The translations under genes were made by a program, and so were the position numbers. A stretch of 64,000 nucleotides of DNA, taken from the NCBI RefSeq assembly GCF_006345805.1, contig NC_043002.1:43834001-43898000 (forward strand), given 5' to 3'. Below the pieces are notes generated by a model. It was not told the origin of the DNA and made no database searches. It saw nothing but the letters and a program-made list of their open reading frames with translations. Shown here piece by piece: positions 1,560 through 63,598 of this stretch (positions within the stretch are counted from its first letter, which is position 1; every line of letters begins with the position of its first letter). Source of the stretch: Octopus sinensis (lineage: Eukaryota).

Positions 1560-3765
1560 TCAGAGATGTTGGCTTCGAAATCAATAGTTCTCTTGCTCAT
1601 GTAGAGATTTAGGAGTATTTTCTTTCAACCTCATCACATAGCCACATATTTATACCTTTCAATTTAAATGAAGTCTTCACTGATTCATTATATTGCAATT
1701 CTGATAACTCCTCTTGGTAATTGAACTGCATCATCAGAACTGTCAATCAGCAGTGGTTGAGTTAACCAAGGCAAAAAGAAAAAAAAAATTCATTGCCTTC
1801 AAATCACAAAATCTGTTGTTGAAGTCATTTATTAAGATATTAAAATGGTCAATAGTTACAATGGCAGCATCATTTACTCAACAAGTATAACTGACTGAAA
1901 TTTCTTTTGGAAACATTTGTTTGGCATATTTCAAGGGCTGTAATGAATCCAAATATCTTTGCTTTCATGTCAACAAGAGTCATATTTGCACCTTGGAGTT
2001 GTTTATTCAAATTTCCAAGTTTCTCAAAGATGTCAAATAACTGACAAATGCTTTTCCATCCATTGTTGACAGCATTTTCATTTTACATTTATCAACCCGT
2101 GGCCCCTACCTGGGACGTAGTCAGTCCACCTGTGCATACCTTCCTGCTTGTGACACTTGTGAAGACCTGTTGAGGCAAATCAAATCAAAGTCAAATCGAA
2201 TCAAGTCAAACCAAATCAAAATAGATGAACATCAATGGAATTTGTATCCTTGTGGTACCAGTGCCGGTGGCACATAAGAAAACCATCCGAACGGGACCGT
2301 AGCCAGTACCGCATCGACTGGCCTCCGTGCCGTGGGCACGTAACAAACACCATCCGATCGTAGCCGTTCGCCAGCCTCATCTGGCACCTGTGTCGGTGGC
2401 ACATAAGAAAAACACCGAAAACACCATATCCGAGTGTGGCCGTCTGCCAGCCTCGTCTGGCACCTGTGTCGGTGGCACATAAAAAACACCATCCGAGCGT
2501 GGCCGTCTGCCAGCCTCGTCTGGCACCTGTGTCGGTGGCACATAAAAAACACCATCCGAGCGTGGCCGTCTGCCAGCCTTGTCTGGCACCTGTGTCGGTG
2601 GCACATAAAATCACCCACTACACTCTCGGAGTGGTTGGCGTTAGGAAGGGCATCCAGCTGTAGAAACACTGCCAGATCTGACTGGCCTGGTGTAGCCTTC
2701 GGGCTTGCCAGACCCCAGTTGAACCGTCCAACCCATGCTAGCATGGAAAGTGGACATTAAACGATGATGACTGAGAAAGTCATTTCGCTGATCAAATAAT
2801 TCCATGAACCTTTTGAAGCCATTTCCACTTGATAGCTACCTTACTTCTGTATGGGTCAATAATTAAACATGCTTGGCACTTTGATTTACACAAAACTGCT
2901 TAAAAAGATGTTCAGCTTTGGAATTAACTTTAATGCTATTGACACACTTGATCACAGCTTGTAGAACGTCATTAAGAACAGGGGATAGTTTCTTTGCAAC
3001 CAAATTTTCTCAGTTTGTAATGCAAAAGATAATCAACATTTTTTGATTTTCATCCTCCATCATTTTTAAGCATCCCCTTTTCTTGCCCATCATAGCAGGT
3101 GCATTGTCTGCCGCGCATGACAGTAAGTTTTCTTTAGGTATTTTGCTTGTATCCAAATAATGTTTAAGTTTGCTGTGGATATCCTTTGCTGTTGTTGTTG
3201 TTTCCAATGATTTGCAAAACAACATCTCTTCCTGCAAAGCTTTGTGCTCAATATATTTCACATAAGTCCATAACAGGGTGGATTCATCCATTTATAATAA
3301 GAATTTTTGTGATTTTAATGTCTCAATAAGCTTGTTTTCAACACCTTGTCCCATTTCATCAATTCTGTTGGAGACAGTGTTATTACTGAGTAGCATGGCC
3401 CTGACACATCTATCATCATTTTGTTGTACAGTTTTTAAGAATGTTGAGATTGCTGGTTTAATCAGTTGCTCTGCAAAAGTGATTCTTTCCATGTTTTGCT
3501 ATAAGTAGGGAGATTTCATAGCTAGCTTTAAGGGCACAAATGTGGTACACATGTTGTGCAGCAAATAGTGAAGTGAATCTGAATTAGAATTGTTGGGATG
3601 TCTTATCCTCAAGTGCATTTTTAAGCCTGCCTGCCCTTATTGACTCATTTTCTGGTGACACAATAAGCAGAACGATTTACGTTCATCATGGTCATCAGGA
3701 ATAAACCCAAACTTCAAAAACTCCACCGCATATTGACGAGTCTTCTTCTTGCTTTGGTTACTCAT
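1560..3765 (-). pseudogene. Decayed hAT (Charlie/Buster, ZBED5/8-like) transposase, split by an RTE 3' UTR insertion at 2094-2770
   Basis: Fragments in order: BED-finger-like CLLCHQKM..HLRIRH, LSNNTVSNRIDEM, MDEST, EEMLFCKSLETTTTAKDI, ADNAPAMMGKKRG, HTEVR*LS. After the insertion the remainder reads approximately IFEKLGNLNKQLQG..NDFNNRF..YQEELSELQ. Several stops and frameshifts. Confidence 0.85.
2094..2770 (+). mobile_element. RTE LINE, 3' UTR only (young family A)
   Basis: Near identical to the UTR after the RT stop codon at 6224 and 60591. Contains the 63-nt module array and an (ATG)n tail. Confidence 0.92.
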
Positions 3766-5748: not shown

Positions 5749-5782
<34 letters not shown>

Positions 5783-5852
5783 GACGATGATGATGATGAT
5801 ATATATATATATATATATATAATATATATATATAATGACGATGATGATGATG

Positions 5853-5886
<34 letters not shown>

Positions 5887-5897
5887 TCACACACACA

Positions 5898-6824
5898 ATG
5901 CTCCGATGGATGTGTAATGTCAGTGTTCATAATCGTCAGAGTGTAAGTACCTTGAGAGAAAAGTTGAACCTAAGAAGCATCAGTTGTGGTGTGCAAGAGA
6001 GACGGCTGCGCTGGTATGGTCATGTGACGAGAATGGCTGAAGATAGTTGTGTGCAAAAGTGCTACACCCTAGCAGTTGAGGGAACCTGTGGAAGAGGTAG
6101 ACCCAGGAAAACCTGGGACAAGGTGGTGAAGCATGACCTTCGAGCTTTAGGTCTCACCAAGGAAATGACTAGAGACCGAGACCTATGGAAGTATGCTGTG
6201 CGTGAGAAGACCCGGCAAGACTAGTCAGGCCATAACCCGTGGCCCCTACCTGAGATGTAGTCAGTCCACCTGTGCATACCTTCCTTCTTGTGACACTTGT
6301 GAAGACCTGTTGAGGCAAGTGAAAATCAAAACAAATCAAAATAGATGAACATCAATGGAATTTGTATCTTTGTGGTACCAGTGCCGGTGGCACACAAGAA
6401 AACCATCCGAACGTGGCCGTAGCCAGTACCGCATCGACTGGCCTCCGTGCTGTGGGCACGTAACAAACACCATCCGATCGTGGCCGTTCGCCAGCCTCAT
6501 CTGGCACCTGTGTCGGTGGCACATAAAAAACACCATCCGAGCGTGGCCGTCTGCCAGCCTCGTCTGGCACCTGTGTCGGTGGCACATAAAAAACACCATC
6601 CGAGCATGGCCGTTCGCCAGCCTCGTCTGGCACCTGTGTCGGTGGCACATAAAATCACCCACTACACTCTCGGAGTGGTTGGCGTTAGGAAGGGCATCCA
6701 GCTGTAGAAACACTGCCAGATCTGACTGGCCTGGTGCAGCCTTCGGGCTCCCCAGACCCCAGTTGAACCGTCCAACCCATGCTAGCATGGAAAGCGGTTG
6801 TTAAATGATGATGATGATGATGAT
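5898..6824 (+). mobile_element. 5'-truncated RTE LINE (family A): RT C-terminus plus complete 3' UTR
   Basis: MLRWMCNV..QERRLRWYGHV..GRGRPRKTW..EKTRQD* is almost identical to the end of ORF 60591-62939. (ATG)n tail. Confidence 0.95.

Positions 6825-10134: not shown

Positions 10135-10138
<4 letters not shown>
9979..10138 (+). mobile_element. 5' half of tRNA-derived SINE, ending in (TA)n
   Basis: High identity to the first 160 nt of 24249-24659. Confidence 0.85.
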
Positions 10139-10171
<33 letters not shown>

Positions 10172-24248: not shown

Positions 24249-24659
24249 GGCATAGGAGTGGCTGTGTGGTAAGTAGCTTACTTACCGACCACATGGTTCA
24301 GGGTTCAGTCCCACTACGTGGCACCTTGGGCAAGTGTCTTCTACTATAGCCTCGGGCCGACCAAAGCCTTGTGAGTGGATTTGGTAGAAGGAAACTGAAA
24401 GAAGCCCGTCATATATATGTATATATATATGTATGTGTGTGTATGTTTGTGTGTCTGTGTTTGTCCTCCCAACATCGCTTGACAACCGATGCTGGTGTGT
24501 TTACGTCCCTGTAACTTAGCGGTTCGGCAAAAGAGACCGATAGAATAAGTACTAGCCTTACAAAGAATAAGTCCTGGGGTCGATTTGCTCGACTAAAGGT
24601 GGTGCTCCAGCATGGCCACAGTCAAATGACTGAAACAAGTGAAAGAGTAAAAGAGTAAA
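24249..24659 (+). mobile_element. Full-length young tRNA-derived SINE (octopus OK/OR-type; family not assigned)
   Basis: A box tggctgtgtgg, B-box-like ggttcagtccc, central (TA)/(TG) tract, (gagtaaaa)n tail. Near identical copies at 30928 and 50287. Confidence 0.9.
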
Positions 24660-28139: not shown

Positions 28140-29075
28140 GTCGTCATCATCATCATCATCATCATATTTGTTTTCCATGCTGGCATGGGTTGAGCGGTGT
28201 GACCAGAGCTGGCAAGCTGCACGAAGCTCCAGTCTGATTTGACATAGTTTCTATAGCTGGATGCCCTTTATGACATCAACCACTTTATAGAGGGTGCTGG
28301 GTGCTTTTATGTGGCACTGCACAAGTGCCTTTCTTGTGACACTGGCATAAGTGCACCTTACGTGTTACAGGCATGAGTGACCTTTACATGACACTGGCAC
28401 AGGACTCTTTCAGGCCAATTGTCTTCACCAGGGCAAATGGTCTTAACATGTCTGCTGTAGAGTACTGGTCTTCTTGAGGACATCAAGGGACCAGGTTTCA
28501 TGGTCCTTTGTCATCTCATCTGAAAGGTTCAGTGTCTTGAGGTCATCCTTCGATACTTCATCCCACATCTTCCTGGGTTCCTTCTTCCATGAGTTCCATC
28601 TATTTTTAGAGATTGGCACTTCTTTATGGAGCTGTTGGCATCCATCCACATCACATGACCAAACCCCTGCAGTCTCCTCTCTTGCACACTGCATCTCATT
28701 TCTCTTTTGCCTAACTACTCTCTCAATACACTAGCACACTGTCAAACATGTACACTTACATTGCACATCCAGTGAAGCATACTAGCCTCATTCCTCTCTA
28801 ACCTTCACATGTCCTCTATATTCAGGGCCCATGTCTCACTACCATGTAGAATTGCTATCCATATACATGCATCATACTATCTTCCTTCCACTTGGCGAGA
28901 GAAACCTTTCATAGCCAATGGAGATAAAAGCTCTCTTAATTTCCTCCATCCTATTTTTATTCTAGCTATTATGCTAACCGAACCTACTACCCTACTACTA
29001 ATTTGGTTCCCTATGTAGCATAGATTATCTTCTACTTCTAATGGGCCACCAGAGTATTTGAGAGAATTATGCATG
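28140..29075 (-). mobile_element. Old 5'-truncated RTE LINE
   Basis: IIARIKIGWRKLRELLSPL, KEPRKMWDEVSKDDLKTLNL. Antisense tail with (cat)n. Confidence 0.8.
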
Positions 29076-30927: not shown

Positions 30928-31332
30928 TAGGAGTGGCTGTGTGGTAAGTAGCTTGCTTACCAACCACATGGTTCCGGGTTCAGTCTCACTGCATGGCACC
31001 TTGGGCAAGTGTCTTCTACTATAGCCTCAGGCCGACCAAAGCCTTGTGAATGGATTTGGTAGACGGAAACTGAAAGAAGCCCGTCGTATATATGTATATA
31101 TATATATGTGTATGTATATGTGTGTGTATGTTTGTGTGTCTGTGTTTGTGTGTCCGACCAACATCGCTTGACAACCGATGCTGGTGTGTTTATGTCCCCG
31201 TAACTTAGCGGTTCGGTAAAAGTACTAGGCTTACAAAGAATAAGTCCTGGGGTCGATTTGATCGACTAAAGGCGGTGCTCCAGCATGGCCGCAGTCAAGT
31301 GACTGAAACAAGTAAAAGAGTAAAAAGAGAGT
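30928..31332 (+). mobile_element. Full-length young tRNA-derived SINE
   Basis: Near identical to 24249-24659. Confidence 0.92.
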
Positions 31333-31519: not shown

Positions 31520-31745
31520 TTTATCATCATTGTCATTTAACATCCCTTGCATGTTGGCAGAGGTTGAACAGTTTGACATGAACTGAGCAAGCAGAAGGCT
31601 GCATTGAGATGCAATGTCTGCTCTAGCATGATCTCTACAGCTGGATGCCCTTCCTAATGCCCAATCACTTAACAAAAAGTATAGGGTACTATTTTTCATT
31701 GCACCAGCACTGGTAAGGTCACCAAGTACCTGCAAGATAAGACCC
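31520..31745 (-). mobile_element. Old RTE-type 3' tail
   Basis: catcattgtcatttaac..ctacagctggatgcccttcctaatgccc. Confidence 0.7.
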
Positions 31746-33743: not shown

Positions 33744-34255
33744 GAAGACCTGTTGAGGCAAGTGAAATCGAAATCAAATTTGATGACTGGCATCCATGCT
33801 AGTGGGGCGCTAAGAGCACCATACAAGCATGATCATTGCCAGAGCGGCTAACTGGCTTTCGTGCCAGTGGCATGTAAAAAGCACCATTCAAGCATGATTG
33901 TTACCAGCATTGCCTTAATGGCACTTATGCCAGTGGCAAGTGAAAAAACATTCGAGCAAGGTCGTTGCCAGTGCTGCTGGACTGGATCCTGTGCAGGTGG
34001 CATGTAAAAAACACCATTTGAGCGTGGCCATTGCCAGTACCACATGATTGGCCCTCGTGCTGGTGGCACGTAAAAGCACCCACTACACTCTCAGACTGGT
34101 TGGCATTAGGAAGGGCATCCAGCTGTAGAAACTCTGCCAGATTGGAGCCTGGTGCAGCCATCTAGTTCGCCAGTCCTCAGTCGTATCGTCCAACCCATGC
34201 CATCATGGAAAGCGGACATTAAATGATGATGATGAAGAGGATGAGGATGATGATG
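33744..34255 (+). mobile_element. RTE 3' UTR (family B) with a perfect 15-bp target site duplication
   Basis: TSD aataattaaaacagc at 33729-33743 and 34256-34270. Module array, terminal aggaagggcatccagc motif and (ATG)n tail. Confidence 0.92.
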
Positions 34256-35895: not shown

Positions 35896-35953
35896 AAGGG
35901 GATCTTTATTTATTAATTTTTTTATTTAGAATTTAATAAACAAGAAAATATCT

Positions 35954-36302
35954 TCATCATCATCATCGTTTAATATCCGCTTTCCATGCTAGCATGGGTT
36001 GGATGATTTGACTGAGGACTGGCGAACCAGATGGCTGCACCAGGCTCCACTCTTGATCTGGCAGAGTTTCCACAGCTGGATGCCCTTCCTAACACCAACC
36101 ACTCTGAGAGTGTAGTGGGTGGTTTTACATGCCACCGGCATGGGGGCCAGTCAGGCGGTACTGGCAATGACCTTGCTCAAATATTTTTCCACATGCCACC
36201 GGCACAAGTATCAGTAAAGCAGCACTGGTAACGATCATGCTTGAATGGTGCCTTTTACATGCCACCGGCACAGAAGCCAGTTAGCTACTCTGGCAACGAT
36301 CA
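35954..36302 (-). mobile_element. RTE 3' UTR (family B), antisense
   Basis: Reverse complement of the 3' part of 33744-34255. Confidence 0.88.
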
Positions 36303-38766: not shown

Positions 38767-40597
<1,831 letters not shown>

Positions 40598-41354
40598 CAT
40601 ATATGGATACAGAACATCAGCAAATGTGTAAACAACATCAAATTCGAAAACAAACAAGTTAAATATCCAAACAACGAGAAAAAAAATGGAAAACTGGACA
40701 AGAAAACACAGCGAATAACCCTTCATTGGTTGTTGGCTGTCTAACTACTCCTCATTTCGAGCATTCAACGACAATATGAGTCTTCAAAGACAGTTGCTCC
40801 CATAAATTCCCAAAGGTTGGGAACAAAAACTGGACAGTGGAGACATGCAAGGAAACCAAATGAAAAGAAATATGGGGGATTGTTAGACCAGAACTAGAGG
40901 AAAATAGTGAATGGCAGGAGAAATATTTTCTTCGAAAAGAGGAATGATAGAAGAGAGAGAAAGAAAACATCCAGTCCTTTGAATGGCCATGCAGGAAAAG
41001 AAAGATGGATGATGGTCACGCGTGTGCAATGAGAGAAAAAGAGAAAGAGAGAGAGCAAACTGTAAAGGAGGAGAAAAAGGGAATTAGAGAAGGATGGAGG
41101 AAGAAAACAGTAAAGAATAGAGTCGTATCAAAAATGTCAAGATAAACTTACTTTATAGATAGATGGGTGGCGTTAGCTGTCCATTTTCCACTTTTTCTCA
41201 TGTTGTTTGCATATTAAATCGTTTATTTTCATAATTCATGTTGCTTACACAGTTGGTGATATCCTGTACCCATATATGTATATATATATATCATATTATT
41301 AAATTGAATGCTACGCATCCATTTCAAAGTAAGTTTATACATAACCACATGCAT

Positions 41355-44300
41355 TCATCATCATCATCATCATCGTTTAGCGTCCGTTTTCCATGCTAGC
41401 ATGGGTTGGACGGTTCTACTGGGGTCTGTGAAGCCAGAAGGCTTCATCAGGCCCAGTCAAATCTGGCAGTGTTTCTACGGCTGGATGCCCTTCCTAATGC
41501 CAACCACTCCGTGAGTGTAGTGGGTGCTTTTTACGTGCCACCCGCACTGGTGCCAGACAGAAATGGCAAACGGCCACGAACGGATGGTGCTTTTTATGTG
41601 CCACCGGCACGAGGGTCAGGCGAGGCTGGCAACGGACACGAAACGGGGCGGTGCTGGCAACGGTCGCGAAACGGAAAGTTCTCTTACATGCCACCGGCAC
41701 TGGTAACACATCTGCAATTTCCATTGATCGATTTCCATTGATCGATTTCGATTCTGATCGTCACTTGCCTCAACGGGTCTTCACAAGCAGAGTTTTGACA
41801 TGCCACCGGCACTGGTAGCACATCCGCAATTTCCATTGATCGATTTCGATTCTGATCCTCACATGCCTCATCACGTCTTCACAAGTAGAGTTTTGTGTCC
41901 CAAGAAGGGAAGGTATGCATACGTAGGCTGGCTCCATCCCATGTAGAAGGCCACGGGTTATGGACTCACTTGTCCTGCCGGGTCTTCTCGCGCACAGCAC
42001 ACTTCCAGAGGTCTCGGTCTCTAGTCATTTCCTCAATGAGACCTAAAGTTCGAAGGTCGTGCTTCACCACCTCGTCCCAGGTTTTCCTGGGTCTGCCTCT
42101 TCCACAGGTTCCCTCAACCGCTAGGGTGTGGCACTTTTTCACACAACTATCTTCATCCATTCTCGCCACATGACCATACCAGCGCAAACGTCTCTCTTGC
42201 ACACCACAACTGATGCTTCTTAGGTCCAGCTTTTCTCTCAAGGTACTTACACTCTGCCGAGTGTGTGAGTACCGGCATTACACATCCTTCGGAGCATACT
42301 GGCTTCATTTCTAGCGAGCTTACGCATATCCTCAGCAGTCACGGCCCATGTTTCACTGCCATGTAGCATGGCTGTTTGTACACACGCATCATACAGTCTG
42401 CCTTTCACTCTGTGCGAGAGGCCTTTTGTCACCAGCAGAGGTAAGAGCTCTCTGAACTTTGCCCAAGCTATTCTTACTCTAGCAGTTACACTTTCAGCAC
42501 ACCCCCCCCCCGCTGCTGACTTGGTCACCTAGGTAACGGAAACTATCAACTATTTCTAGTTTTTCTCCCTGGAAAGTGACGGAAGTTGGTCTCAGAGCAT
42601 TTTCAGTGTTTATTGTTCCTGAGCATCTGCCACATACAAAAACCATCTTCCTAGTTAGCCTTCCTTTGACATTGCTGCATCTCTTATGTGTCCATAGCTT
42701 ACACTTGGTGCATCTTATAGAGTTTCTACCTACACCTTTTCTACAGATCGAGCAGGGCCATCTACCTGAAGGTGTTTGTGATTTGTCTACCTTCCTACTG
42801 ATTACGACTTTGGTTTTAGCTAGATTGACTCTGAGGCCCTTCGATTCTAATCCTTGTTTCCACACCTGAAACTTCTCCTCCAGTTCTGATAGCACTCAGC
42901 AATTAGAGCAAGGTCATCAGCATAGAGGAGCTCCCAAGGCATCCTGTTTTGAATTCCTCCGTTATTGCCTGGAGGACTATGATAAATAGGAGGGGGCTGA
43001 GTACTGAGCCTTGGTGGACTCCTACCTCTACCCGGAATTCTTCACTGTACACATTTCCAACCCTCACCCTACTAGCGGCGTCCCTGTACATGGCCCGCAC
43101 AGCTCTCACTAACCATTCATCTATCCCTAGTTTCCTCATTGCCCACCAGATAAGGGATCGGGGACCCTGTCGAAGGCTTTCTCCATGTCAACAAAAGCCA
43201 GGTACAGGGGCTTATCTTTGGCTAGGTATTTCTCCTGCAGCTGCCTTACCAGGAATATAGCATCAGTAGTACTTTTCCCTGGCACAAACCCAAACTGCAT
43301 CTCATCTAAACTAACTCTCTCTCTAATTAGTTGGGCTATGACCCTCTCCGTAACCTTCATCACCTGGTCCAACAGCTTGATACCTCTGTAGTTATTTGTA
43401 TCTAGGGCATCACCTTTACCTTTGTAGCAGTTGACTATTATACTGCTACACCAGTCATTGGGTATGACCCCTTTGTGTATCACCTGATTAACTATACGGG
43501 TGACTAGGCTATAGCCGACACTACCAGACATTTTGAGCATCTCTGCAGTGATTCCTGATGGGCCTGGGGCTTTCCCTGTCTTCATGCTTCTAATTGCCTT
43601 AGCTACCACGGAACTATCAACTCGGATAGCTGGTCCCTCTGTTGGGTCAACATTCGGCAGACTCTCTTTATCCCATTCATTTTCTTCATTCAGCAACCTT
43701 TCATAGTGGCATCTCCAAACCTCTCTCTTTGCATCCTCATTTAGCGCAAGTGAACCATCTTCCATGCGAACACACTTCTCCTACCTACCTCACGATTCTC
43801 TCTCACACACTGTCTTGCAACACGAAACACCTCCAGTCTTTGGTCCTCACGGCGCAGAATATTGGCAAATTTTTTCTTATCTGCTTCCCCTCTGGCTAAA
43901 TAAACCTGTCTCCTAGCTTCTCTTTTGGCAGTCTGATACAATCCCCTACCACCTACCCCCTTTTTTCCAGACCTTCCAAGCCTGTCTCTTTTCTCTAATA
44001 GCCCTGTCTACAATATTGTTCCACCACCACGTTATTCTAGGTCGAGAGGGGACTTTGCACCAGCCACAGATCTGGTCAGTGGCTCTCAGCAGATTGTCCC
44101 TTAGAAACGTCCAGCTGTCTTCTACCCCCCCTGTGATGCTCTATCCCCTTCTACTTCGTCAGAGGCTTCAAGTAATATGTCCCTAAATCTCTGTCCATTT
44201 TCAGGATCTTTAAGCTTCCAGATCCTTCTTCTCCATATTTGTCGTCTTCTGGTTGTCCTCCTAGTCCTGATCCTAAAGTCACTAACTACCAGTCTATGTT

Positions 44301-44643
44301 GTGGGGCATTCTTCACCTGGGAAGGTTTTGGCATTTATAAGCAGCCATCTCTCCCTTTGCCTTGTAAGGATGTAGTCAATTTGGCTGGTATGTTGGCCCG
44401 ATTGGTAAGTGACTAGGTGGCTGGTAGGTTTCCTGAAGTTAGTGTTGCAACTCATAAGATTATTTGCATCGCAGAACTCCAGCAGCCTGGTTCCCTCCTC
44501 GTTGCGGGAGCCATAGCCATAGCCTCCATGTACGCCATGGAAGCCCCCAGCATGTCGTCCAACGTGACCATTGAAGTCACCAGCCACAAAGATAAGGTCT
44601 CTGTCGTTCGTCAACGAGGTAGTCTGCAGTAGAGTGTCATAGA
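41355..44643 (-). mobile_element. Long 5'-truncated RTE LINE (family C UTR) with a frameshifted EN-RT ORF
   Basis: APE endonuclease AGDFNGHVG..SQIDYIL. RT NYRGIKLL, QFGF, FVDMEKAFD, GVHQGSVLSPLLF, YLG. PHD-like Cys cluster. Several frameshifts. Confidence 0.95.
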
Positions 44644-44660
44644 ATGCAGTAGAGTGGGAT

Positions 44661-47029: not shown

Positions 47030-47249
47030 GAGCATATCTGATGCCAGTACCGCTTGACTGGCCCTCGTGCTGGTGGCATGGAAAAGCACCAACTACACTC
47101 TTAGGGGTTGTCGTTAGGAAGGGCATCTAGCTGTAGAAACTTTGTCAGATCAGATTGGGGCCTGGTGCAGCCTTCTATCTCGCCAGCCCTCAGTCAAACC
47201 ATCCAACCCATGCCAGCATGGAAAGCAGGCATTAGACGATGATGATGAT
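47030..47249 (+). mobile_element. RTE 3' tail (family B-like)
   Basis: gccagtaccgcttgactggccctcgtgctggtggcatgg..aggaagggcatctagctgtagaaac..gatgatgatgatg. Confidence 0.85.
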
Positions 47250-47285
47250 GTATACACACATACAATTTATATATATATATATATA

Positions 47286-49072: not shown

Positions 49073-49850
49073 CCCTTCAGTATTCAAACCTTTTATATCT
49101 CGCCAAAATATTTAACCTGTTTTATGTTAGAAATGGCCAGATCTGGCCTCTCACCTCATTCCTACAATGTCATTCTAAATCTAAGCAATTGCAACATTGA
49201 AATTTCAAGGCAATGAGATAATTCATAATTAATTCAAAACAATATGTGAGGGAGAGGTAGATCCAGGAAGACATGGGATGAGGTGGTCAAGCATGACCTT
49301 CGAACGTTGGGCCTCACAGAGGCAATGACGAAAGACTGAGATCTCTGGAGATATGCTGTGACTGTGAAGACCCGACAAATAACGTGAGTTCATGGCTGTT
49401 TCCTGCACCAGCTTCACATAGCAGCCCCAGCCCATCCAAAGTACCTTGGATTGCAGAACGACCTGCTGTGCTTACCTTACCTTGGATTGTAGGGTGACCT
49501 GCTGTGCTTGAGGAGACATTGAGCCATTCCATCGAAATCAAAATATATCAAATGGAAATTGTAGTTGTGATACCTGTGCCGGTGGCACGTAAAAAGCACC
49601 ATCCGAATGTGGCCAATGCCAGCGCTGCCTTGACTGGCTTCTGTGCTAGTGGCATGTAAAAAGCACCCACTACACTCACAGAGTGTTACTAACTTTTATA
49701 TTTATCATCCTTTCTCTCCTGACTTCCCAGACCCCGGTTGAACAGTCCAACCTGTGCTAGCACGGAAAACGGCCGTTAAATGATGATGATGATGAATATA
49801 AATTAACAAAACATCACATTTGACAGAATAATCTGAATACTAAATGGCTA
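49073..49850. mobile_element. TTAA MITE split by an RTE 3' fragment (+, 49245-49795)
   Basis: MITE halves 49073-49244 and 49796-49850 match 34520-34736. The insert encodes GRSRKTWDEVVKHDLRTLGL and ends in (ATG)n. Confidence 0.75.
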
Positions 49851-50286: not shown

Positions 50287-50515
50287 TCTCTTTTACTCTT
50301 TTTCTTGTTTTAGTCATTTGACTGCGGCCATGCTGGAGCACTGCCTTTAGTCGAGCAAATCGACCCCAGGACTTATTCTTTGTAAGCCTAGTACTTATTC
50401 TATCGGTCTCTTTTGCCGAACCTCTAAGTTACGGGGGACATAAACACACCAGCATCAGTTATCAAGCAATGCTGGAGGGACAAACACAGATTCACAAACA
50501 TATACACACACATAC

Positions 50516-50577
<62 letters not shown>

Positions 50578-50731
50578 GATGGGCTACTTCCAGTTTCTGT
50601 CTACCAAATCCACTCACAAAGCTTTGGTTGGCCCGAGGCTATAGTAGAAACACTTGCCCAAGGTGCCACGCTGTGGGACTGAACCCAGAACCATGTAGCT
50701 GGTAAGCAAACTACTTACCACACAACCACTC
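50287..50731 (-). mobile_element. Full-length tRNA-derived SINE
   Basis: Reverse complement of 24249-24659. Confidence 0.9.
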
Positions 50732-52678: not shown

Positions 52679-53406
52679 TATCATCATCATCATCATCATC
52701 GTTGTTTAACGTCTGCTTTCCATGCTAGCATGGGTTGGACAGTTTGACTGTGGGCTGGCGAACCAGATGGCTGCACCAAGCTCCAGTCTTGATCTGGCAG
52801 AGTTTCTTCAGCTGGATGCTCTTCCTAACGCCAACCACTCCGAGAGTGTAGTGGGTGCTTTTACGTGCCACTGGCACGGTTGCCAGTCAGGCGGTACTGG
52901 CAACGACCTCGCTTGAATTTTTTACACATGCCAATGGCACAGGTGCCAGTAAGGTGATGCTGGTAACGATCCCGCTCGAATGGTGCCTCCTACATGCCAC
53001 CAGCACGGAAGCCAGTTAGCCGCTCTGGCAACAATCACGCTCAGATGGTGCTCGTGCCCGTCATCGAATTTCACTTTGATTTTGATTTCGGTTTCGATTT
53101 CAGTTGCCTCAACAGGTCTTCGCAAGCAGAGAAGGAAAAGGTATGCACAAGTGGGCTGGTTAAACCCCTGGCACAGGCAAACGAGGTTATGGTCTCATTT
53201 GGCTTGCTGGGTCTTCTCAAGCACAGCATATTTCCAAAGGTCTCGGTCACTAGTCATTTCCTTAGTGAGGCCTAAAGTTCGAAGGTCGTGCTTCACCACT
53301 TCAGCCCAGGTCTTCCTGGGTCTACCTCTTCCACAAGTTCCCTCAACCTCTAGGGTGTGGCACTTTTTCACACAGCTATCCTCATCCATTCTCGCTACAT
53401 GACTAT
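52679..53406 (-). mobile_element. 5'-truncated RTE LINE (family B UTR)
   Basis: HVARMDEDSCVKKC..GRGRPRKTW..EKTQQAK, module array and (cat)n. Confidence 0.92.
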
Positions 53407-56679: not shown

Positions 56680-57013
56680 TTGTTTTGCAAGTTACTTGGT
56701 GAACTTGCCAGTGCTGGTGCCACTTAAAAAGCATCCAGTTCACACTGTAATGTGGTTAGCATTTGCGAAGGGCATTCGACTGTAAAAAACAAACCATGCC
56801 AAAACTGACCTCACCTGTCCTGGTGTCATGTAAAAAGCACTCAGCCCACTCTGCAGGGTGGTTGGTATTAGGAAGGAAATTCAGCTATGAAAAAAACCAT
56901 GCCAAAACAGACACAGAAGTACGGTGCAGTCTTCTGCCTGGCCAGCTCCTTTCAAACTGTCCAACCCATACCTGCATGGAAGAATGACATTAAACAATGA
57001 TGATGATGATGAT
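56680..57013 (+). mobile_element. Old RTE-type tail with the terminal module present twice
   Basis: tgtggttagcatttgcgaagggcattcgactgtaaaaaac and gtggttggtattaggaaggaaattcagctatg, then tccaacccatacctgcatgg..(gat)n. Confidence 0.65.
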
Positions 57014-57816
57014 GAACACTCTTTGTATAGATGATAATAATAAGCAGTTATGATGTATAATGTCATTAACCTACTAACACTCTTAAAAAGTAATAAGGAG
57101 ATTGCTGTGAAAGGTTTTGATTGAGGTTTTTTTTTTTTGCATCATGCTCTTTATGAGATACACCATGAAGTTGAATTAATAACAGATTATTTATTTAAAA
57201 CCCAGAAAGGGAAGAAATTGGCGAAGATCTACATCTTCATCTTTCTCTGCATTCAGACAAGAGTCAGGAACAATAAGCATTTCACTTCTCATGGCAGTCG
57301 GACTTATCGACATTCCAGCAACTCTGCCAAATATCATGTAACATGTTCTCGTCTGTAAAATGTAAAATCTCCTCTGTAAAATGAGTTTCAGTAATTTTGT
57401 AATGTTTTTTTTTTTTTCTGTTCATATGAGTGAATATTCTCAGGTGTGGAGGTCCATTACTGAAAAGGCTCCCTTCAATATATCTGGACACTTTAGTGAT
57501 ATTACAACCCATGTCCACATCATGATTTAACATCCACTTTTCTGTGCTTGCATGGGTCAGACAGATTTTGTTGAGGCGGATTTTCTTCGGTCAGATTCCT
57601 TTCTTGTCACCAACCCTCAACTATTTCCAAGAGAGGTACTATTTCCTATTCCCAGACATGTTTCTGATGAAAGACTAAATGAGCAACATGACTTATATAA
57701 TGGTGATGCTCATTTACAACCAGCACTTGATGTCTATACAAGGTACGCACAAACAAACACACACACACACGTGTTTAAGCCCACTAAATCAACTCAAGGT
57801 TTTGGTTTGTCTAGGA

Positions 57817-58130: not shown

Positions 58131-58196
58131 GGATATTAATTTATTTTATCTCATTTGTTTTATACTTTTCGTGTTTATAATTTATATTTATAATTC

Positions 58197-60608
58197 ATCA
58201 TCATCATCATCATCATCATTTAGCGTCCGTTTTCCATGCTAGCATGGGTTGGACGGTTCAACTGGGGTCTGGGGAGCCCGAAGGCTGCACCAGGCCAGTC
58301 AGATCTGGCAGTGTTTCTACAGCTGGATGCCCTTCCTAACGCCAACCACTCCGAGAGTGTAGTGGGTGATTTTATGTGCCACCGACACAGGTGCCAGACG
58401 AGGCTGGCGAACGGCCACGCTCGGATGGTGTTTTTATGTGCCACCGACACAGGTGCCAGACGAGGCTGGCAGATGGCCACGCTCGGATGGTGTTTTTATG
58501 TGCCACCGACACAGGTGCCAGATGAGGCTGGCGGACGGCCACGATCGGATGGTGTTTGTTACGTCCCCAAAGCACGGAGGCCAGTCTATGCGGTACTGGC
58601 TACGGCCACGTTCGGATGATTTTCTTGTGTGCCACCGGCACTGGTACCACAAAGATACAAATTCCATTGATGTTCATCTATTTTGATTTGTTTTGATTTG
58701 ATTTGATTTTCACTTGCCTCAACAGGTCTTCACAAGTGTCACAAGAAGGAAGGTATGCACAGGTGGACTGACTACGTCCCAAGTAGGGGCCACGGGTTAT
58801 GGCCTGACTAGTCTTGCCGGGTCTTCGGATGGTGTTTTTATGTGCCACCGACACAGGTGCCAGATGAGGCTGGCGAACGGCCACGATCGGATGGTGTTTG
58901 TTGCGTGCCCACAGCACGGAGGCCAGTCGATGCGGTACTGGCTACGGCCACGTTCGGATGGTTTTCTTGTGTGCCACCGGCACTGGTACCACAAAGATAC
59001 AAATTCCATTGATGTTCATCTATTTTGATTTGATTTGATTTGATTTTCACTTGCCTCAACAGGTCTTCACAGGTCTTCACAAGTGTCACAAGAAGGAAGG
59101 AAGGTATGCACAGGTGGACTGACTACGTCCCAAGTAGGGGCCACGGGTTATGGCCTGACTAGTCTTGCCGGGTCTTCGGTTGGTGTTTTTATGTGCCACC
59201 GACACAGGTGCCAGATGAGGCTGGCGGACGGCCACGATCGGATGGTGTTTGTTATGTGCCCACATCACAGAGGCCAGTCGATGCGGTACTGGCTACGGCC
59301 ACGTTCGGATGGTTTTCTTGTGTGCCACCGGTACTGGTACCACAAAGATACAAATTCCATTGATGTTAATCTATTTTGATTTGGTTTGATTTGATTTGAT
59401 TTGATTTTGATTTTCACTTGCCTCAACAGGTCTACACAAGTGTCACACACTTGCCTCAACAGGTCTTCACAAGTGTCATAAGTAGGAAGGTATGCACAGG
59501 TGGACTGACTACATCGCCGGGTCTTCGGATGGTGTTTTTATGTGCCACCGACACAGGTGCCAGATGAGGCTGGCGAACGGCCACGATCGGATGGTTTTCT
59601 TGTGTGCCACCGGTACTGGAACCACAAAGATACAAATTCCATTGATGTTCATCTATTTTGATTTGGTTTGATTTTCACTTGCCTCAACAGGTCTTCACAA
59701 GTGTCACACGTGTCACACACTTGCCTCAACAGGTCTCCACAAGTGTCACACACTTGCCTCTGCCTCAACAGGTCTTCACAAGTGTCACACACTTGCCTCT
59801 GCCTCAACAGGTCTTCACAAGTGTCATAAGAGGGAAGGTATGCACAGGTGGACTGACTACGTCGCCGGGTCTTCGGATGGTGTTTTTATGTGCCACCGAC
59901 ACAGGTGCCAGATGAGGCTGGCGAACGGCCACGATCAGATGGTGTTTGTTGTGCCCACAGCACGGAGGCCAGTCGATGCGGTACTGGCTACGGCAACGTT
60001 CGGATGGTTTTCTTGTGTGCCACCGGTACTGGAACCACAAAGATACAAATTCCATTGATGTTCATCTATTTTGATTTGGTTTGATTTTCACTTGCCTCAA
60101 CAGGTCTTCACAAGGGTCACACACTTGCCTCAACAGGTCTCCACAAGTGTCACACACTTGCCTCTGCCTCAACAGGTCTTCACAAGTGTCACACACTTGC
60201 TTCAACAGGTCTTCACAAGTGTCATAAGAGGGAAGGTATGCACAGGTGGACTGACTACGTCGCCGGGTCTTCGGATGGTGTCTTTATGTGCCACCGACAC
60301 AGGTGCCAGATGAGGCTGGCGAACGGCCACGATCGGATGGTGTTTGTTACGTCCCCAAAGCACGGAGGCCAGTCTATGCGGTACTGGCTACGGCCACGTT
60401 TGGGTGGTTTTCTTGTGTGCCACCGGCACTGGTACCACAAAGAATACAATTCCACTGATGTTCATCTATTTTGATTTGTTTTGATTTGATTTTCACTTGC
60501 CTCAACAGGTCTTCATAAGTGTCACAAGAAGGAAGGTATGCACAGGAGGACTGACTACGTCCCAGGTAGGGGCCACGGGTTATGGCCTGACTAGTCTTGC
60601 CGGGTCTT
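58197..60608 (-). repeat. Six-unit tandem array of the RTE 3' UTR (~340-400-bp units plus the terminal complete UTR)
   Basis: The junction gccgggtctt|cggatggtg recurs at 58825, 59176 (cggttggtg variant), 59525, 59873 and 60271. Confidence 0.95.
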
Positions 60609-62939
60609 CTCACGCACAGCATACTTCCATAGGTCTCGGTCTCTAGACATTTCCTTAGTGAGACCTAAAGTTCGAAGGTCGTGCTTCACCACCTCGTCCC
60701 AGGTTTTCCTGGGTCTACCTCTTCCACAGGTTCCCTCAACTGCTAGGGTGTAGCACTTTTGCACACAACTATCTTCAGCCTTTCTCGTCACATGACCATA
60801 CCAGCGCAGCCGTCTCTCTTGCACGCCACAACTGACGCTTCTTAGGTTCAACTTTTCTCTCAAGGAACTTACACTCTGACGATTATGAACACTGACATTA
60901 CACATCCATCGGAGCATACTGGCTTCATTTCTTGCGAGCTTACGCATATCCTCAGCAGTCACGGCCCATGTTTCACTACCATGTAGCATGGCTGTACGTA
61001 CACATGCATCATACAGTCTGCCTTTTACTCTGAGCGAGAGGCCTTTTGTCACCAGCAGGGGTAAGAGCTCTCTAAACTTTGCCCAGGCTATTCTTACTCT
61101 AGCAGTTACACTTTCAGCACACCCACCCCCGCTACTGACTTGGTCTCCTAGGTAGCGGAAGCTATCAACTACTTCTAGTTTGTCTCCCTGGAACGTGGCA
61201 GAAGTTGGTCTCTGCACATTTCCAGTGTTTATTGCTCCTGAGCATTTGCCACAGACAAAAACTATTTTCCTAGTTAGCCTTCCTTTGACATTGCTGCACC
61301 TCTTATGTGTCCATAGCTTACACTTGGTGCATCTTATAGAGTTTCTACCTACACCTTTTTTACAGATCGAGCAGGGCCATCTACCTGAAGGCGTTTGTGA
61401 TTGATCTACCTTCCTACTTATTAGGACTTTGGTTTTGGCTAGGTTGATTCTAAGGCCCTTCGATTCTAATCCTTGTTTCCACACCTGAAACTTCTCCTCC
61501 AGTTCTGATAGTGACTCAGCAATTAGAGCAAGGTCATCAGCATAGAGGAGCTCCCAGGGGCAACCTGTCTTGAATTCCTCCGTTATTGCCTGGAGGACTA
61601 TGATAAATAGGAGGGGACTGAGGACTGAACCTTGGTGGACCCCAACCTCTACCCGGAATTCTTCACTGTACTCGTTGCCAACCCTCACCTTACTAGCAGC
61701 GTCTCTGTACATGGCTTGCACAGCTCTCACCAACCATTCTTCTATCCCTAGTTTCCTCATTGACCACCAGATAAGGGATCGGGGGACCCTGTCAAAGGCT
61801 TTCTCCAAGTCAACAAAAGCCAGGTACAAGGGCTTATCTTTGGCTAGGTATTTCTCCTGCAGCTGTCTTACCAGGAATATAGCATCAGTAGTACTTTTCC
61901 CTGGCACGAACCCAAACTGCATATCATCTAAGCTAACTCTCTCTCTAATTAGTTGGGCTATAACCCTCTCCGTAACCTTCATTACCTGATCCAGCAGCTT
62001 GATGCCCCTGTAGTTATTTGTCTCTAGGGCGTCGCCTTTACCTTTGTAGCAGTTGACTATTATGCTGCTACACCAGTCATTGGGTATGACCCCCTCGTGT
62101 ATCACCTGGTTAACTATACGGGTGACTAAGCTATAGCCGACACCACCAGATATTTTGAGCATCTCTGCAGTAATTCCTGATGGGTCTGGGGCTTTCCCTG
62201 TTTTCATGCTTCTAATTGCCTTATCTACTAAGGAACTGTTAACTCGGATTGCTGGTCCCTCTGTTGGGTCGACATTCGGCAGACTCTCTATATCCCATTC
62301 ATTTTCTTCATTCAGCAACCTATCATAGTGGCGTCTCCAAGCCTCTCTCTTTGCATCCTCATTAAGCGCAAGTGAACCGTCATCCTTGCGAACACATTTC
62401 TCTCCTACCACGTCACGATTCTCTCTCACACACTGTCTTGCAACAAGAAATACCTCAAGTCTTTCATCCTCACGACGCAGGACATTGGCAAATTTTTCCT
62501 TATCTGCCTCCCCTCTGGCTAGATAGACCTGTCTCCTGGCTTCCCTTCTGGCAGACTGATACACTTCCCTGCTACCACCGTTCTTCCAGGCCTTCCAAGC
62601 CTGTTTCTTTTGTCTAATAGCCCTGTCAACAATATTGTTCCACCACCATGTTATTTTGGGTCTTAAGGGGACTTTGCACCAGCCACAGATCTGGTCAGCG
62701 GCTTTCAGCAGGTTGTCCCTCAGAAGCGTCCAGTTGTCTTCTACCCCATGCGTAGCTATACTCCCTTCCATTTCGTCTAAGGCTTCAAATAACATATCTC
62801 TAAATCTCTGTCCATTCGCAGGGTCTTTAAGCTTCCAGACCCTTCTTCTCCATGTTGGTCGTCTTCTAGTCGCCCTCTTAGTCCTGATCCTAAAGTCACT
62901 AACTACCAGTCTATGTTGTGGGCATTTATAAGCAGCCAT
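60591..62939 (-). CDS. RTE-clade reverse transcriptase, 782-aa open frame, with a C4HC3 PHD finger insert
   Basis: NYRGIKLL, QFGF..STTDAI, FVDLEKAFD, GVHQGSVLSPLLF, YADD (61533-61544), FRYLG, RLRWYGHV, GRGRPRKTW. Confidence 0.96.
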   Translation of the reverse strand: MAAYKCPQHRLVVSDFRIRTKRATRRRPTWRRRVWKLKDPANGQRFRDMLFEALDEMEGSIATHGVEDNWTLLRDNLLKAADQICGWCKVPLRPKITWWWNNIVDRAIRQKKQAWKAWKNGGSREVYQSARREARRQVYLARGEADKEKFANVLRREDERLEVFLVARQCVRENRDVVGEKCVRKDDGSLALNEDAKREAWRRHYDRLLNEENEWDIESLPNVDPTEGPAIRVNSSLVDKAIRSMKTGKAPDPSGITAEMLKISGGVGYSLVTRIVNQVIHEGVIPNDWCSSIIVNCYKGKGDALETNNYRGIKLLDQVMKVTERVIAQLIRERVSLDDMQFGFVPGKSTTDAIFLVRQLQEKYLAKDKPLYLAFVDLEKAFDRVPRSLIWWSMRKLGIEEWLVRAVQAMYRDAASKVRVGNEYSEEFRVEVGVHQGSVLSPLLFIIVLQAITEEFKTGCPWELLYADDLALIAESLSELEEKFQVWKQGLESKGLRINLAKTKVLISRKVDQSQTPSGRWPCSICKKGVGRNSIRCTKCKLWTHKRCSNVKGRLTRKIVFVCGKCSGAINTGNVQRPTSATFQGDKLEVVDSFRYLGDQVSSGGGCAESVTARVRIAWAKFRELLPLLVTKGLSLRVKGRLYDACVRTAMLHGSETWAVTAEDMRKLARNEASMLRWMCNVSVHNRQSVSSLREKLNLRSVSCGVQERRLRWYGHVTRKAEDSCVQKCYTLAVEGTCGRGRPRKTWDEVVKHDLRTLGLTKEMSRDRDLWKYAVREKTRQD

Positions 62940-63460
62940 CTTTCCTTTTTTCTGGCAAGGATGTAGTCGATTTGGCTAGTATGCCGGCCCGATCGGTAGG
63001 TGACCAGGTGGCTTGTCGGTTTCCTGAAGTTAGTGTTGCAAATCATAAGACTATTCGCATCGCAGAACTCCAGCAGCCTGGTTCCCTCCTCGTTGCGGGA
63101 ACCATAACCGTAGCCTCCATGCACGCCATGGAAGCCCCCAGCACATCGTCCAACATGCCCATTGAAGTCACCAGCCACAAAGAGAAGGTCCCTGTCGTTC
63201 GTCAATGATGTGGTCTGCAGTAGGGTGTCATAGAAACAGTCTTTCTGTCCATCAGGTAGCCCTGGCTGAGGGGCATAGGCCGATATAATAGTTGCTAAAC
63301 TATGGTGGAGCACTAATCTAATCTTAATTATTCTGTCACTTACTGTGACTACCTCGATTACCTTATCTACCCATTTTTCGGCGATAAGCATGCCCACACC
63401 CCCGACTCCGTCAGTATTCCCAGCCCAGAAAATCTTGTACCTCTGTCCTTTGCCTGATAC
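62903..63460 (-). pseudogene. APE endonuclease part of the same RTE, 5'-truncated and frameshifted from the RT
   Basis: GVGMLI..SDRII..ISAYAPQ..AGDFNGHVG..NEEGTRLLEFC..TNF..SQIDYIL. The frame reads open back to about 63460 (VSGKGQRYKIFWAG). Confidence 0.93.
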
Positions 63461-63598
63461 AACAGGCTTCTTTCAGTTTCCGTCTACCAAATCCACTCAC
63501 AAGGCATTGGTCGGCCCGGGGCTATAGCAGAAGACATTTGCCCAAGATGCCATGCAGTGGGACTGAACCCAGAACCATGTGGCTGGTTAGCAAGCTAC
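63457..63598 (-). mobile_element. SINE 5' half (A box missing) fused to the RTE 5' end
   Basis: Minus strand gtagcttgctaaccagccacatgg..ggaaactgaaagaagcctgttGTATcaggcaaagg. Confidence 0.9.

What the first reader, a model, noticed from the sequence alone, without database searches (positions are those of the whole stretch)
58197..60608. RT-adjacent hierarchical array: six tandem copies of the RTE 3' UTR with nested sub-repeats and mixed ancestry
Seen: units 60272-60608, 59874-60271, 59526-59873, 59177-59525, 58826-59176 and the terminal 58197-58825. Each restarts at the last ORF codons via the same junction, with GA microhomology (ccatccGA|agacccgg). Units 2-4 share a 37-nt deletion and carry a 33-nt sub-repeat amplified 4, 4 and 2 times. 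Unit 3 lost one 63-nt module. Units 1 and 6 share variants (ccccaaag, agtctatg) absent from the middle units, which keep the state seen in the copies at 2094 and 5898. Inference: simple slippage of one copy does not easily give this order. It suggests repeated RT template jumps between different transcripts, or a satellite forming from a LINE UTR. The transcript would carry over a dozen structured modules behind an open RT frame, like an RT plus ncRNA array unit.
Basis: partly seen in the sequence, partly recalled or inferred. Interest (0 to 1): 0.8.

Follow-up and report, generated by a model that had tools for sequence, protein, structure and literature searches.

The report
Tandem array inside a dead LINE
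The downstream untranslated region of a broken LINE retrotransposon has been duplicated head-to-tail into six copies, most likely by ordinary DNA duplication, unequal exchange and gene conversion; this is a real but ordinary early stage of a repeat array born from a mobile element.

Summary
On the minus strand a 5'-truncated, frameshifted non-LTR retrotransposon (endonuclease fragment, 782-aa RT frame) is followed by five ~340-400-bp units and a sixth that runs into the normal distal UTR and (TGA)n tail. All five joints are the same sequence, CCATCCGA|AGACCCGG, with 2 nt of microhomology.

One identical junction points to one founding event, not repeated RT jumps. Shared derived indels nest in adjacent units ((U2,U3),U4; U5,U6), and U2 and U3 differ by 0.9% while other pairs differ by 4-9%, so the array grew stepwise as DNA. 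The "mixed ancestry" of units 1 and 6 is a patch of at most 78 nt: 0 differences in 76 columns inside it, 12 in 181 outside. One short gene-conversion tract explains it. Units and modules fold no better than shuffled sequence.

I could not test whether the junction occurs elsewhere in the genome, because no searchable collection holds this host. An array already carried by the source element therefore remains possible.

Tandem repeats derived from a LINE 3' UTR plus part of the ORF are already described. New member of a known kind; low interest.

The parts
62903..63463 (-). Endonuclease (APE/EEP-type) part of the LINE. It is 5'-truncated and in a different frame from the RT part.
   Evidence: Pfam Exo_endo_phos_2, E = 2e-7. 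tblastn of homologue P0001 residues 105-288 maps to 63463-62912 in frame -1, against frame -3 for the RT part.
60591..62939 (-). 782-aa open frame with the reverse transcriptase and a weak PHD-like zinc finger. Stop codon TAG at 60593-60591.
   Evidence: ORF list. Pfam RVT_1 E = 2.5e-32 and PHD E = 6e-4, the latter below Pfam's cut-off. The closest solved structures are LINE-1 ORF2p and R2. The best database homologues are 55-59% identical EN+RT+PHD proteins of about 1050-1100 aa.
60272..60608 (-). Unit 1 (337 nt). Holds the last 17-18 nt of the real ORF with its stop codon, then the proximal UTR: one 33-nt motif, a (CAAAT)n stretch, the divergent module M1 and one canonical 63-nt module. Carries the derived 3-substitution patch.
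   Evidence: Alignment, site table, motif counts.
59874..60271 (-). Unit 2 (398 nt). Has the 37-nt deletion that removes the copied stop codon, and the 33-nt motif four times.
   Evidence: TRF 60089-60224, period 33, 3.9 copies.
59526..59873 (-). Unit 3 (348 nt). Has the 37-nt deletion and the 33-nt motif four times. The 67-nt module M1 is deleted between ACCATCCGA direct repeats. Differs from unit 2 by 0.9%.
59177..59525 (-). Unit 4 (349 nt). Has the 37-nt deletion, the 33-nt motif twice, and seven private substitutions.
   Evidence: TRF 59415-59478.
58826..59176 (-). Unit 5 (351 nt). Full-length unit with the copied stop codon. Closest to the dispersed single-UTR copy (1.5% apart). Has private 4-nt and 10-nt insertions.
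58483..58825 (-). Unit 6, proximal part, homologous to units 1-5. Carries the same derived patch as unit 1.
58220..58482 (-). Unduplicated distal UTR: two more 62-63-nt modules and a conserved tail of about 170 nt. Many other LINE- and SINE-like elements in the window share this tail.
   Evidence: TRF 58365-58557, period 62. Tail matches at 11 or more other places.
58195..58219 (-). (TGA)n / (ATG)8 microsatellite tail that ends the element.
   Evidence: TRF and the sequence.
60323..60400 (-). The patch in unit 1 that is identical to unit 6, proposed as one arm of a gene-conversion tract. Derived sites at 60375, 60358 and 60353.
   Evidence: The state is derived, because more distant families keep the other state.
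58535..58612 (-). The same patch in unit 6. Derived sites at 58587, 58570 and 58565.
5898..6824 (+). Dispersed 5'-truncated copy of the same family, with the ORF end, a single UTR and no junction. This is the reference for the ancestral architecture.
   Evidence: 95.7-95.9% identity to both ends of the array. Segment divergences of 1.5-3.3%.
2094..2770 (+). An older copy, 5'-truncated inside the proximal UTR. It has four canonical modules and no junction, but it does not tell whether its source carried an array.
39616..39710 (+). A 95-nt tail fragment, 100% identical to the tail of the array-bearing element including (ATG)8, lying inside a 1.8-kb (TA)n.
63457..63598 (-). A 5'-truncated SINE-like body fused to the 5' end of the LINE. 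The break is where intact copies enter their internal (TA/TG)n.

Best explanation
This is a defective copy of an RTE-like non-LTR retrotransposon, 5'-truncated and frameshifted. A 337-bp segment of it, comprising the last 17-18 nt of the ORF and the proximal half of the 3' UTR, became a local tandem array.

Step 1 (inferred). One non-homologous tandem duplication joined ...CCATCCGA, at the end of a 63-nt module, to AGACCCGG..., 18 nt before the stop codon. The two sequences share 2 nt (GA). Candidate mechanisms are end joining between sister chromatids or a replication template switch.

Step 2 (shown by the pattern). Homology-driven unequal exchange or replication slippage between units raised the number stepwise to six.
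- A middle lineage first acquired the 37-nt deletion and a duplicated 33-nt motif, and then gave rise to U4 and the ancestor of U2 and U3.
- The 33-nt motif went from two to four copies.
- U2/U3 is the latest duplication.
- U3 then lost module M1 by recombination between ACCATCCGA repeats.
- U5 and U6 are a second neighbouring pair.

Step 3 (inferred). A cluster of three substitutions arose in one end unit. A gene-conversion tract of at most 78 nt copied it to the other end unit.

The array has no demonstrated function. It is a minisatellite or proto-satellite born from a mobile element.
For: - All five joints have the same sequence, which occurs nowhere else in the window. Independent jumps would not reuse the same two nucleotides with only GA to guide them.
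- Nested shared derived characters sit in adjacent units. The 37-nt deletion and several substitutions mark U2-U4; further changes and the fourfold 33-nt motif mark U2 and U3. Bootstrap support is 99.6% for (U2,U3) and 86% for (U2,U3,U4).
- Unit ages are unequal. U2 and U3 differ by 0.9%, U5 and U6 by 2.1%, and other pairs by 4-9%. A single concatemer-forming event would give a star-shaped tree.
- The U1-U6 grouping (86.6% bootstrap) disappears when columns 345-422 are removed. There are 0 differences in 76 columns inside the patch and 12 in 181 outside (Fisher p = 0.02). Three random sites fall within 23 columns with p = 0.02.
- The shared state is derived.
- The separate copy at 5898-6824 has one UTR and supplies both parental sequences of the junction.
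- The same region shows other slippage products: 33-nt, 10-nt, 4-nt and (CAAAT)n length changes, and the module deletion.
- The literature already describes microhomology end joining followed by unequal exchange as the route from mobile elements to tandem repeats (PMC9659126).
Against: - The founding junction cannot be assigned to DNA repair rather than reverse transcription. Both use 1-3 nt of microhomology.
- The oldest splits among units are about as deep as the divergence between this element and the separate copy. U1 differs from U6 by 12 in 181 columns outside the patch, and from the 5898 copy by 11. The first duplication could therefore predate the insertion.
- The 95-nt fragment at 39616 is identical to this element's tail. 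P(0 differences) is about 0.01 if the two were as diverged as U1 and U6. This hints that the array-bearing lineage, or this locus, was still producing copies after the units had diverged.
- Three substitutions within 23 nt in one unit need a multi-nucleotide event.
- Only one in-window copy is informative about whether other copies lack the array.
Confidence: 0.65

Rival explanations
1. The array, or at least its founding duplication and oldest units, already existed in the source element and reached this locus by retrotransposition. On this reading the family has an array-bearing subfamily that spreads a satellite seed, and later local events added U2/U3.
For: - The deepest unit splits are as old as the split from an independent copy.
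- The 95-nt fragment at 39616-39710 is 100% identical to this element's tail and shares its private tail variants.
- A lower level of repetition, the 63-66-nt modules, is clearly inherited across diverged families.
Against: - The only informative close copy, 5898-6824, has a single UTR.
- No array-specific marker occurs elsewhere in the 64 kb.
- The statistics rest on 95 nt.
- The identical (ATG)8 tail length fits a very recent copy of this locus, or DNA-level copying, equally well.
Confidence: 0.2
2. An internal template switch of the reverse transcriptase during target-primed reverse transcription made the founding junction. The enzyme would have moved from 18 nt upstream of the stop codon back to the module boundary in the UTR. 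DNA-level processes then expanded the array.
For: - 2-nt microhomology at the joint.
- The first duplication is about as old as the insertion.
- The 5' end of the same element is fused to an internal point of a SINE-like body whose 3' half is missing. That could be another template-switch product.
Against: - Neither side of the joint is at an RNA end, whereas the characterised template jumping of non-LTR RTs (R2) is end to end. That statement rests on my own knowledge and was not tested here.
- Nothing in the sequence separates this from end joining or a replication template switch.
- The SINE fusion is equally well explained by insertion into the SINE's (TA)n with a target deletion.
Confidence: 0.15
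3. One reading: the six units were laid down by repeated RT jumps between different transcripts in one or a few retrotransposition events.
For: Units differ from one another, and units 1 and 6 share variants that the middle units lack.
Against: - Five identical joints.
- Nested derived indels in neighbouring units, and very unequal pairwise distances.
- The U1-U6 similarity is confined to at most 78 nt.
- The middle-unit features (37-nt deletion, amplified 33-nt motif) are absent from every other copy in the window, so no donor transcripts are in evidence.
Confidence: 0.03
4. Assembly artefact: mis-joined or over-expanded reads of a repeated UTR.
For: Tandem repeats of about 350 bp inside an abundant repeat family are hard to assemble.
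Against: - Every unit has its own substitutions and indels.
- The differences form a coherent nested pattern with identical joints.
- A collapse or chimera of dispersed copies would not create a junction that the other copies lack.
Confidence: 0.03
5. Double insertion: a second, 5'-truncated copy integrated into the UTR of the first to create the junction. Recombination then produced the array.
For: 5'-truncation joints of LINEs typically show 1-3 nt of microhomology (my own knowledge). The route is proposed for Drosophila satellites (discussed in PMC9659126).
Against: - It predicts a second distal UTR and tail after the array, and only one is present.
- The joint is not in the (TA)n-type targets used by the other insertions in the window.
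Confidence: 0.03

Closest known systems
Chicken HinfI (SCR1) tandem repeat derived from CR1 (listed in review PMC9659126, Table 1)
   Same: The tandem unit is built from the 3' UTR plus part of the coding end of ORF2 of a LINE. The composition matches the present units.
   Different: That repeat is an established genomic tandem-repeat family. Here there are six units, seen at one locus, still attached to their parent element. The LINE clade differs too (CR1 against RTE-like).
Common cetacean satellite from the 3' end of L1, the HeT-A 3'-UTR-derived satellite, and the hypervariable 3' UTR of Ogre elements giving PisTR-A (PMC9659126)
   Same: A retroelement 3' non-coding region that already holds short tandem repeats is the source of longer arrays.
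   Different: Those are high-copy satellites with chromosomal domains. Nothing here shows amplification beyond one locus.
Mouse L1 5'-UTR monomer arrays (my own knowledge, not tested here)
   Same: Arrays of about 200 bp inside a LINE UTR. Their number varies between copies and they are transmitted by retrotransposition. This is the model for the rival 'array-bearing subfamily' reading.
   Different: They lie at the 5' end and act as promoters. Transmission is documented there and unknown here.
Template jumping or switching by non-LTR RTs, as in R2 end-to-end jumps and L1 chimeric retrocopies (my own knowledge)
   Same: Joints with short microhomology, made during reverse transcription.
   Different: Known jumps go from the 5' end of one template to the 3' end of another. 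Here both breakpoints are internal, the same joint recurs five times, and the units have different ages.
Octopus RTE-2_OV (PMC9115989)
   Same: An RTE-clade LINE with a single ORF of about 1100 aa (EN, RT, zinc finger) and a 3' UTR of about 600 nt made mostly of repeats. The single-UTR copy here also has a repeat-rich UTR of about 600 nt.
   Different: The published description mentions no array of whole-UTR units. Identity with that element could not be tested: no matching sequence was found in its supplementary files.

Membership tests
Non-LTR retrotransposon (LINE), RTE-like | Reverse transcriptase domain of the non-LTR type | tested here: met
   Pfam RVT_1 E = 2.5e-32. The best solved-structure matches are LINE-1 ORF2p and R2.
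Non-LTR retrotransposon (LINE), RTE-like | N-terminal APE/EEP-type endonuclease in the same polyprotein | tested here: met
   Exo_endo_phos_2 match. It is collinear with EN+RT homologues, but truncated and frameshifted in this copy.
Non-LTR retrotransposon (LINE), RTE-like | Dispersed copies that are 5'-truncated, share a 3' end and finish in a short tandem-repeat tail | tested here: met
   Copies at 2094, 5898, 39616, 41355-44644, 52681-53406 and others. (TGA)n tails.
Non-LTR retrotransposon (LINE), RTE-like | Placement inside the RTE clade in an RT phylogeny; single ORF without ORF1 | not tested
   No reference clade set was available and the copy lacks its 5' end. Size and domain order agree with the RTE-2_OV description (PMC9115989), but that is resemblance only.
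Tandem repeat / satellite DNA derived from a mobile element | Head-to-tail units whose sequence is homologous to part of a mobile element | tested here: met
   Six units, five identical joints, 82-96% identity to single-UTR copies.
Tandem repeat / satellite DNA derived from a mobile element | Satellite status: long arrays, many loci or high genomic abundance, homogenised monomers | not testable with these tools
   Only one six-unit array exists in the 64 kb. The host genome is in none of the searchable collections.
RT template-jump concatemer | Joints at template ends, and units of equal age (star tree) or units matching distinct donor transcripts | tested here: not met
   Both breakpoints are internal. 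The units form a nested tree with a 0.9% pair against 4-9% pairs. No donors carry the middle-unit features.
RT with an associated structured non-coding RNA array (retron-like unit) | Stable, conserved RNA structure next to a stand-alone RT | tested here: not met
   Folding z-scores from -1.1 to +0.7 for modules, unit and tail. No Rfam family matched. The RT belongs to a eukaryotic EN+RT element.

The most novel reading that the evidence does not exclude
The array is not private to this locus. An RTE subfamily would carry a multi-unit 3' UTR array, founded by an internal RT template switch or in a master copy, and would scatter it by retrotransposition, so that a LINE seeds the same proto-satellite at many sites. 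The identical 95-nt tail fragment 19 kb away would then be a sister or daughter insertion of that lineage.
Probability: 0.15. Interest if true: 0.4.

Novelty: new member of a known kind. Interest (0 to 1): 0.15.

Why it matters
The locus is a cleanly readable snapshot of how a tandem array starts inside a mobile element. It shows one microhomology joint, stepwise unit gain, nested slippage, deletions between internal repeats, and a gene-conversion patch. It could serve as a worked example and as a marker locus for population or long-read studies.

It does not reveal a new mechanism or a new kind of RT-RNA system. It would gain interest only if the junction proved to be dispersed. That would document a LINE spreading a satellite seed in this genome.

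Tried and rejected
Searches for the junction outside the window:
- Metagenome contigs gave four hits, all chance 20-21-mers in high-GC contigs with no further similarity.
- Viral contigs gave none.

Searches for any other copy of the family or of the neighbouring SINE:
- Genome contigs, two patterns: none.
- Viral contigs, two patterns: none.
- The RT protein search gave no hit above 59% identity.
- The exact-protein look-up found nothing on record.
- The host is therefore absent from every searchable collection, and the negative junction results say nothing about dispersal.

Other attempts:
- Rfam and tRNA scans of the window found nothing.
- RNA folding of the modules, one unit and the tail was not more stable than shuffles. 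One call failed on a length limit.
- Literature searches for sequence strings of the tail and the SINE, and a search of the supplementary files of the octopus RTE paper, found nothing. No tool identified the organism.
- From memory, the SINE-like repeat looks like the abundant octopus SINE. The AT-rich, (TA)n-rich context would also fit a penaeid shrimp (PMC7878876). I leave the host open.

Ideas considered and rejected:
- The U1/U6 state as an ancestral or subfamily state. More distant families keep the other state.
- Unequal root-to-tip substitution loads among units as evidence of foreign origin. My hand count from the site table gives about 2.5 to 10 changes per unit, with variance/mean about 1.3, so a clock is not rejected.

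Full report
**What is there**

The feature lies on the minus strand. A 782-aa open frame (60591-62939) carries a non-LTR reverse transcriptase and a weak PHD-like finger. An APE-type endonuclease fragment lies upstream in another frame, at 62903-63463. Against a 1071-aa homologue, the element covers residues 105-1064 and has a frameshift near 62912-62939. It is therefore a 5'-truncated, defective LINE copy. The closest solved structures are LINE-1 ORF2p and R2. The best database relatives are only 55-59% identical.

**The array**

Downstream of the stop codon, the sequence CCATCCGA|AGACCCGG occurs five times and nowhere else in the window. None is expected by chance. These joints delimit units of 337, 398, 348, 349 and 351 nt. 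A sixth unit (629 nt) continues into the undisturbed distal UTR and the (TGA)n tail.

Each unit starts 17-18 nt before the end of the ORF, so units 1, 5 and 6 contain ...TRQD-stop.

A separate copy at 5898-6824 has the ORF end and one UTR of about 600 nt. It supplies both parental sequences of the joint, which overlap by GA only.

- Units 2-4 share a 37-nt deletion, which removes the copied stop codon.
- The 33-nt motif is present 1, 4, 4, 2, 1, 1 times.
- Unit 3 lacks one module. The missing piece is 67 nt, the divergent module, lost between ACCATCCGA direct repeats.

**How the array grew**

Three observations argue for one founding junction followed by DNA-level, homology-driven growth.

1. 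Five identical joints guided only by a dinucleotide cannot reasonably be independent events.
2. Shared derived characters are nested, and their carriers are neighbours. Bootstrap support is 99.6% for (U2,U3), 86% for (U2,U3,U4), and weak for (U5,U6).
3. Unit pairs differ in age. U2 and U3 differ by 0.9%, U5 and U6 by 2.1%, and other pairs by 4-9%. Units made together from one template would give a star tree. Units copied from different transcripts would need donors with the 37-nt deletion and the amplified 33-nt motif, and no other copy in the window has these.

**The 'mixed ancestry' of units 1 and 6**

The three shared substitutions lie within 23 nt. Across alignment columns 345-422 (76 compared columns), U1 and U6 are identical. 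These columns correspond to 60400-60323 in U1 and 58612-58535 in U6.

Outside this patch U1 and U6 differ at 12 of 181 columns. That is as many as U1 against U5 (11) or U1 against the separate copy at 5898 (11). The contrast is significant (Fisher p = 0.02), and three random sites fall within 23 columns with p = 0.02.

The U1-U6 clade (86.6% bootstrap) vanishes when the patch is removed. The shared state is derived, because four more distant families keep the other state.

One short gene-conversion tract between the end units is therefore enough. Equally, one conversion of the ancestor of the middle units by a consensus-like copy would do. Outside that patch, the unit order is what local duplication predicts.

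**Structure claim**

One whole unit, four modules and the tail fold no better than dinucleotide shuffles (z from -1.1 to +0.7). No Rfam family matches. The count of modules behind the RT frame is right: 8 canonical, 5 divergent, and 13 copies of the 33-nt motif. Calling them structured is not supported.

**What stays open**

Divergence between this element and the 5898 copy is similar in every segment:

| Segment | Divergence from the 5898 copy |
|---|---|
| ORF end | 2.9% |
| U1 | 3.3% |
| U5 | 1.5% |
| U6 proximal part | 2.4% |
| Distal UTR and tail | 2.3% |

The deepest unit splits are about as old as the split between the two copies. The first duplication therefore happened around the time of insertion: before, during or soon after.

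A 95-nt tail fragment at 39616-39710, inside a 1.8-kb (TA)n, is 100% identical to this element's tail. It shares the element's private variants and its (ATG)8. If the two were as diverged as U1 and U6, zero differences would have p of about 0.01. This hints that the array-bearing lineage, or this locus, gave rise to a copy after the units had diverged.

Only one in-window copy (5898) tells us that a relative lacks the array.

The decisive test is dispersal of the junction in the genome. I could not run it, because the host is in none of the searchable collections. The four metagenome hits were chance 20-21-mers.

**Comparison with what is known**

A review lists tandem repeats built from the 3' UTR and a partial ORF2 of a LINE (chicken CR1 HinfI/SCR1). 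It also lists the cetacean satellite derived from the L1 3' end, the HeT-A case and the Ogre 3' UTR case. It names microhomology end joining between sister chromatids followed by non-allelic or unequal recombination as the route (PMC9659126). An octopus RTE is described with a 3' UTR of about 600 nt made mostly of repeats (PMC9115989).

The present locus is a small, young, still-attached example of the same kind.

**Verdict**

This is a new member of a known kind, of low interest.

Noticed in passing
window 39616-39710 (+), inside the (TA)n at 38772-40604: A 95-nt, extremely 5'-truncated LINE tail. It is 100% identical, including (ATG)8 and two private tail variants, to the tail of the array-bearing element 19 kb away (58289-58195, minus strand). 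It is either a sister or daughter insertion or a DNA-level patch copy.
   Followed up: partly
window 63457-63598 (-), next to the LINE 5' end at about 63456-63463: The truncated 5' end of the LINE is fused, in the same orientation, to a SINE-like body that lacks its first 20 nt or so. The break is exactly where intact copies (24273-24655, 30948-31325, 50288-50714) enter an internal (TA/TG)n, and the SINE 3' half is missing beyond the LINE tail. This is either insertion into the SINE microsatellite with a target deletion, or an RT template-switch chimera.
   Followed up: partly
window 5742-5879, 38772-40604, 10137-10167, 50512-50576: LINE and SINE copies of these families repeatedly border or interrupt (TA)n tracts. 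The 5898 copy follows (AT)64, and the 95-nt fragment sits in about 915 TA repeats. This suggests a (TA)n target preference or (TA)n growth at insertion sites.
   Followed up: no
window 2345-2610, 6373-6654, 33815-34037, 41523-41642, 58365-58557: Arrays of 62-66-nt modules, with 2 to 4.4 copies, sit in the 3' regions of several diverged LINE- and SINE-like families. This lower level of tandem repetition is inherited through retrotransposition, and its copy number varies.
   Followed up: partly
window 18117-17944, 28144-28329, 31523-31669, 34049-34247, 35950-36150, 41355-41558, 47058-47250, 49723-49795, 52684-52886, 56812-57015: At least ten further elements share the last 150-200 nt or so of the LINE tail at 70-91% identity. 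This fits a LINE with many partner or truncated elements using one 3' end.
   Followed up: no
window 41836-44644 (-): A second, longer copy of a related LINE family. It is 89% identical over 2.8 kb of the ORF, carries several frameshifts and has its own single UTR with no unit array.
   Followed up: partly
window 59853-59872, 60251-60270, 59505-59524 (-): The 37-nt deletion in units 2-4 removes the copied stop codon TAG. It leaves the joint AGACCCGGCGACGTAGTC, a handy second marker for tracing this array in other data.
   Followed up: yes
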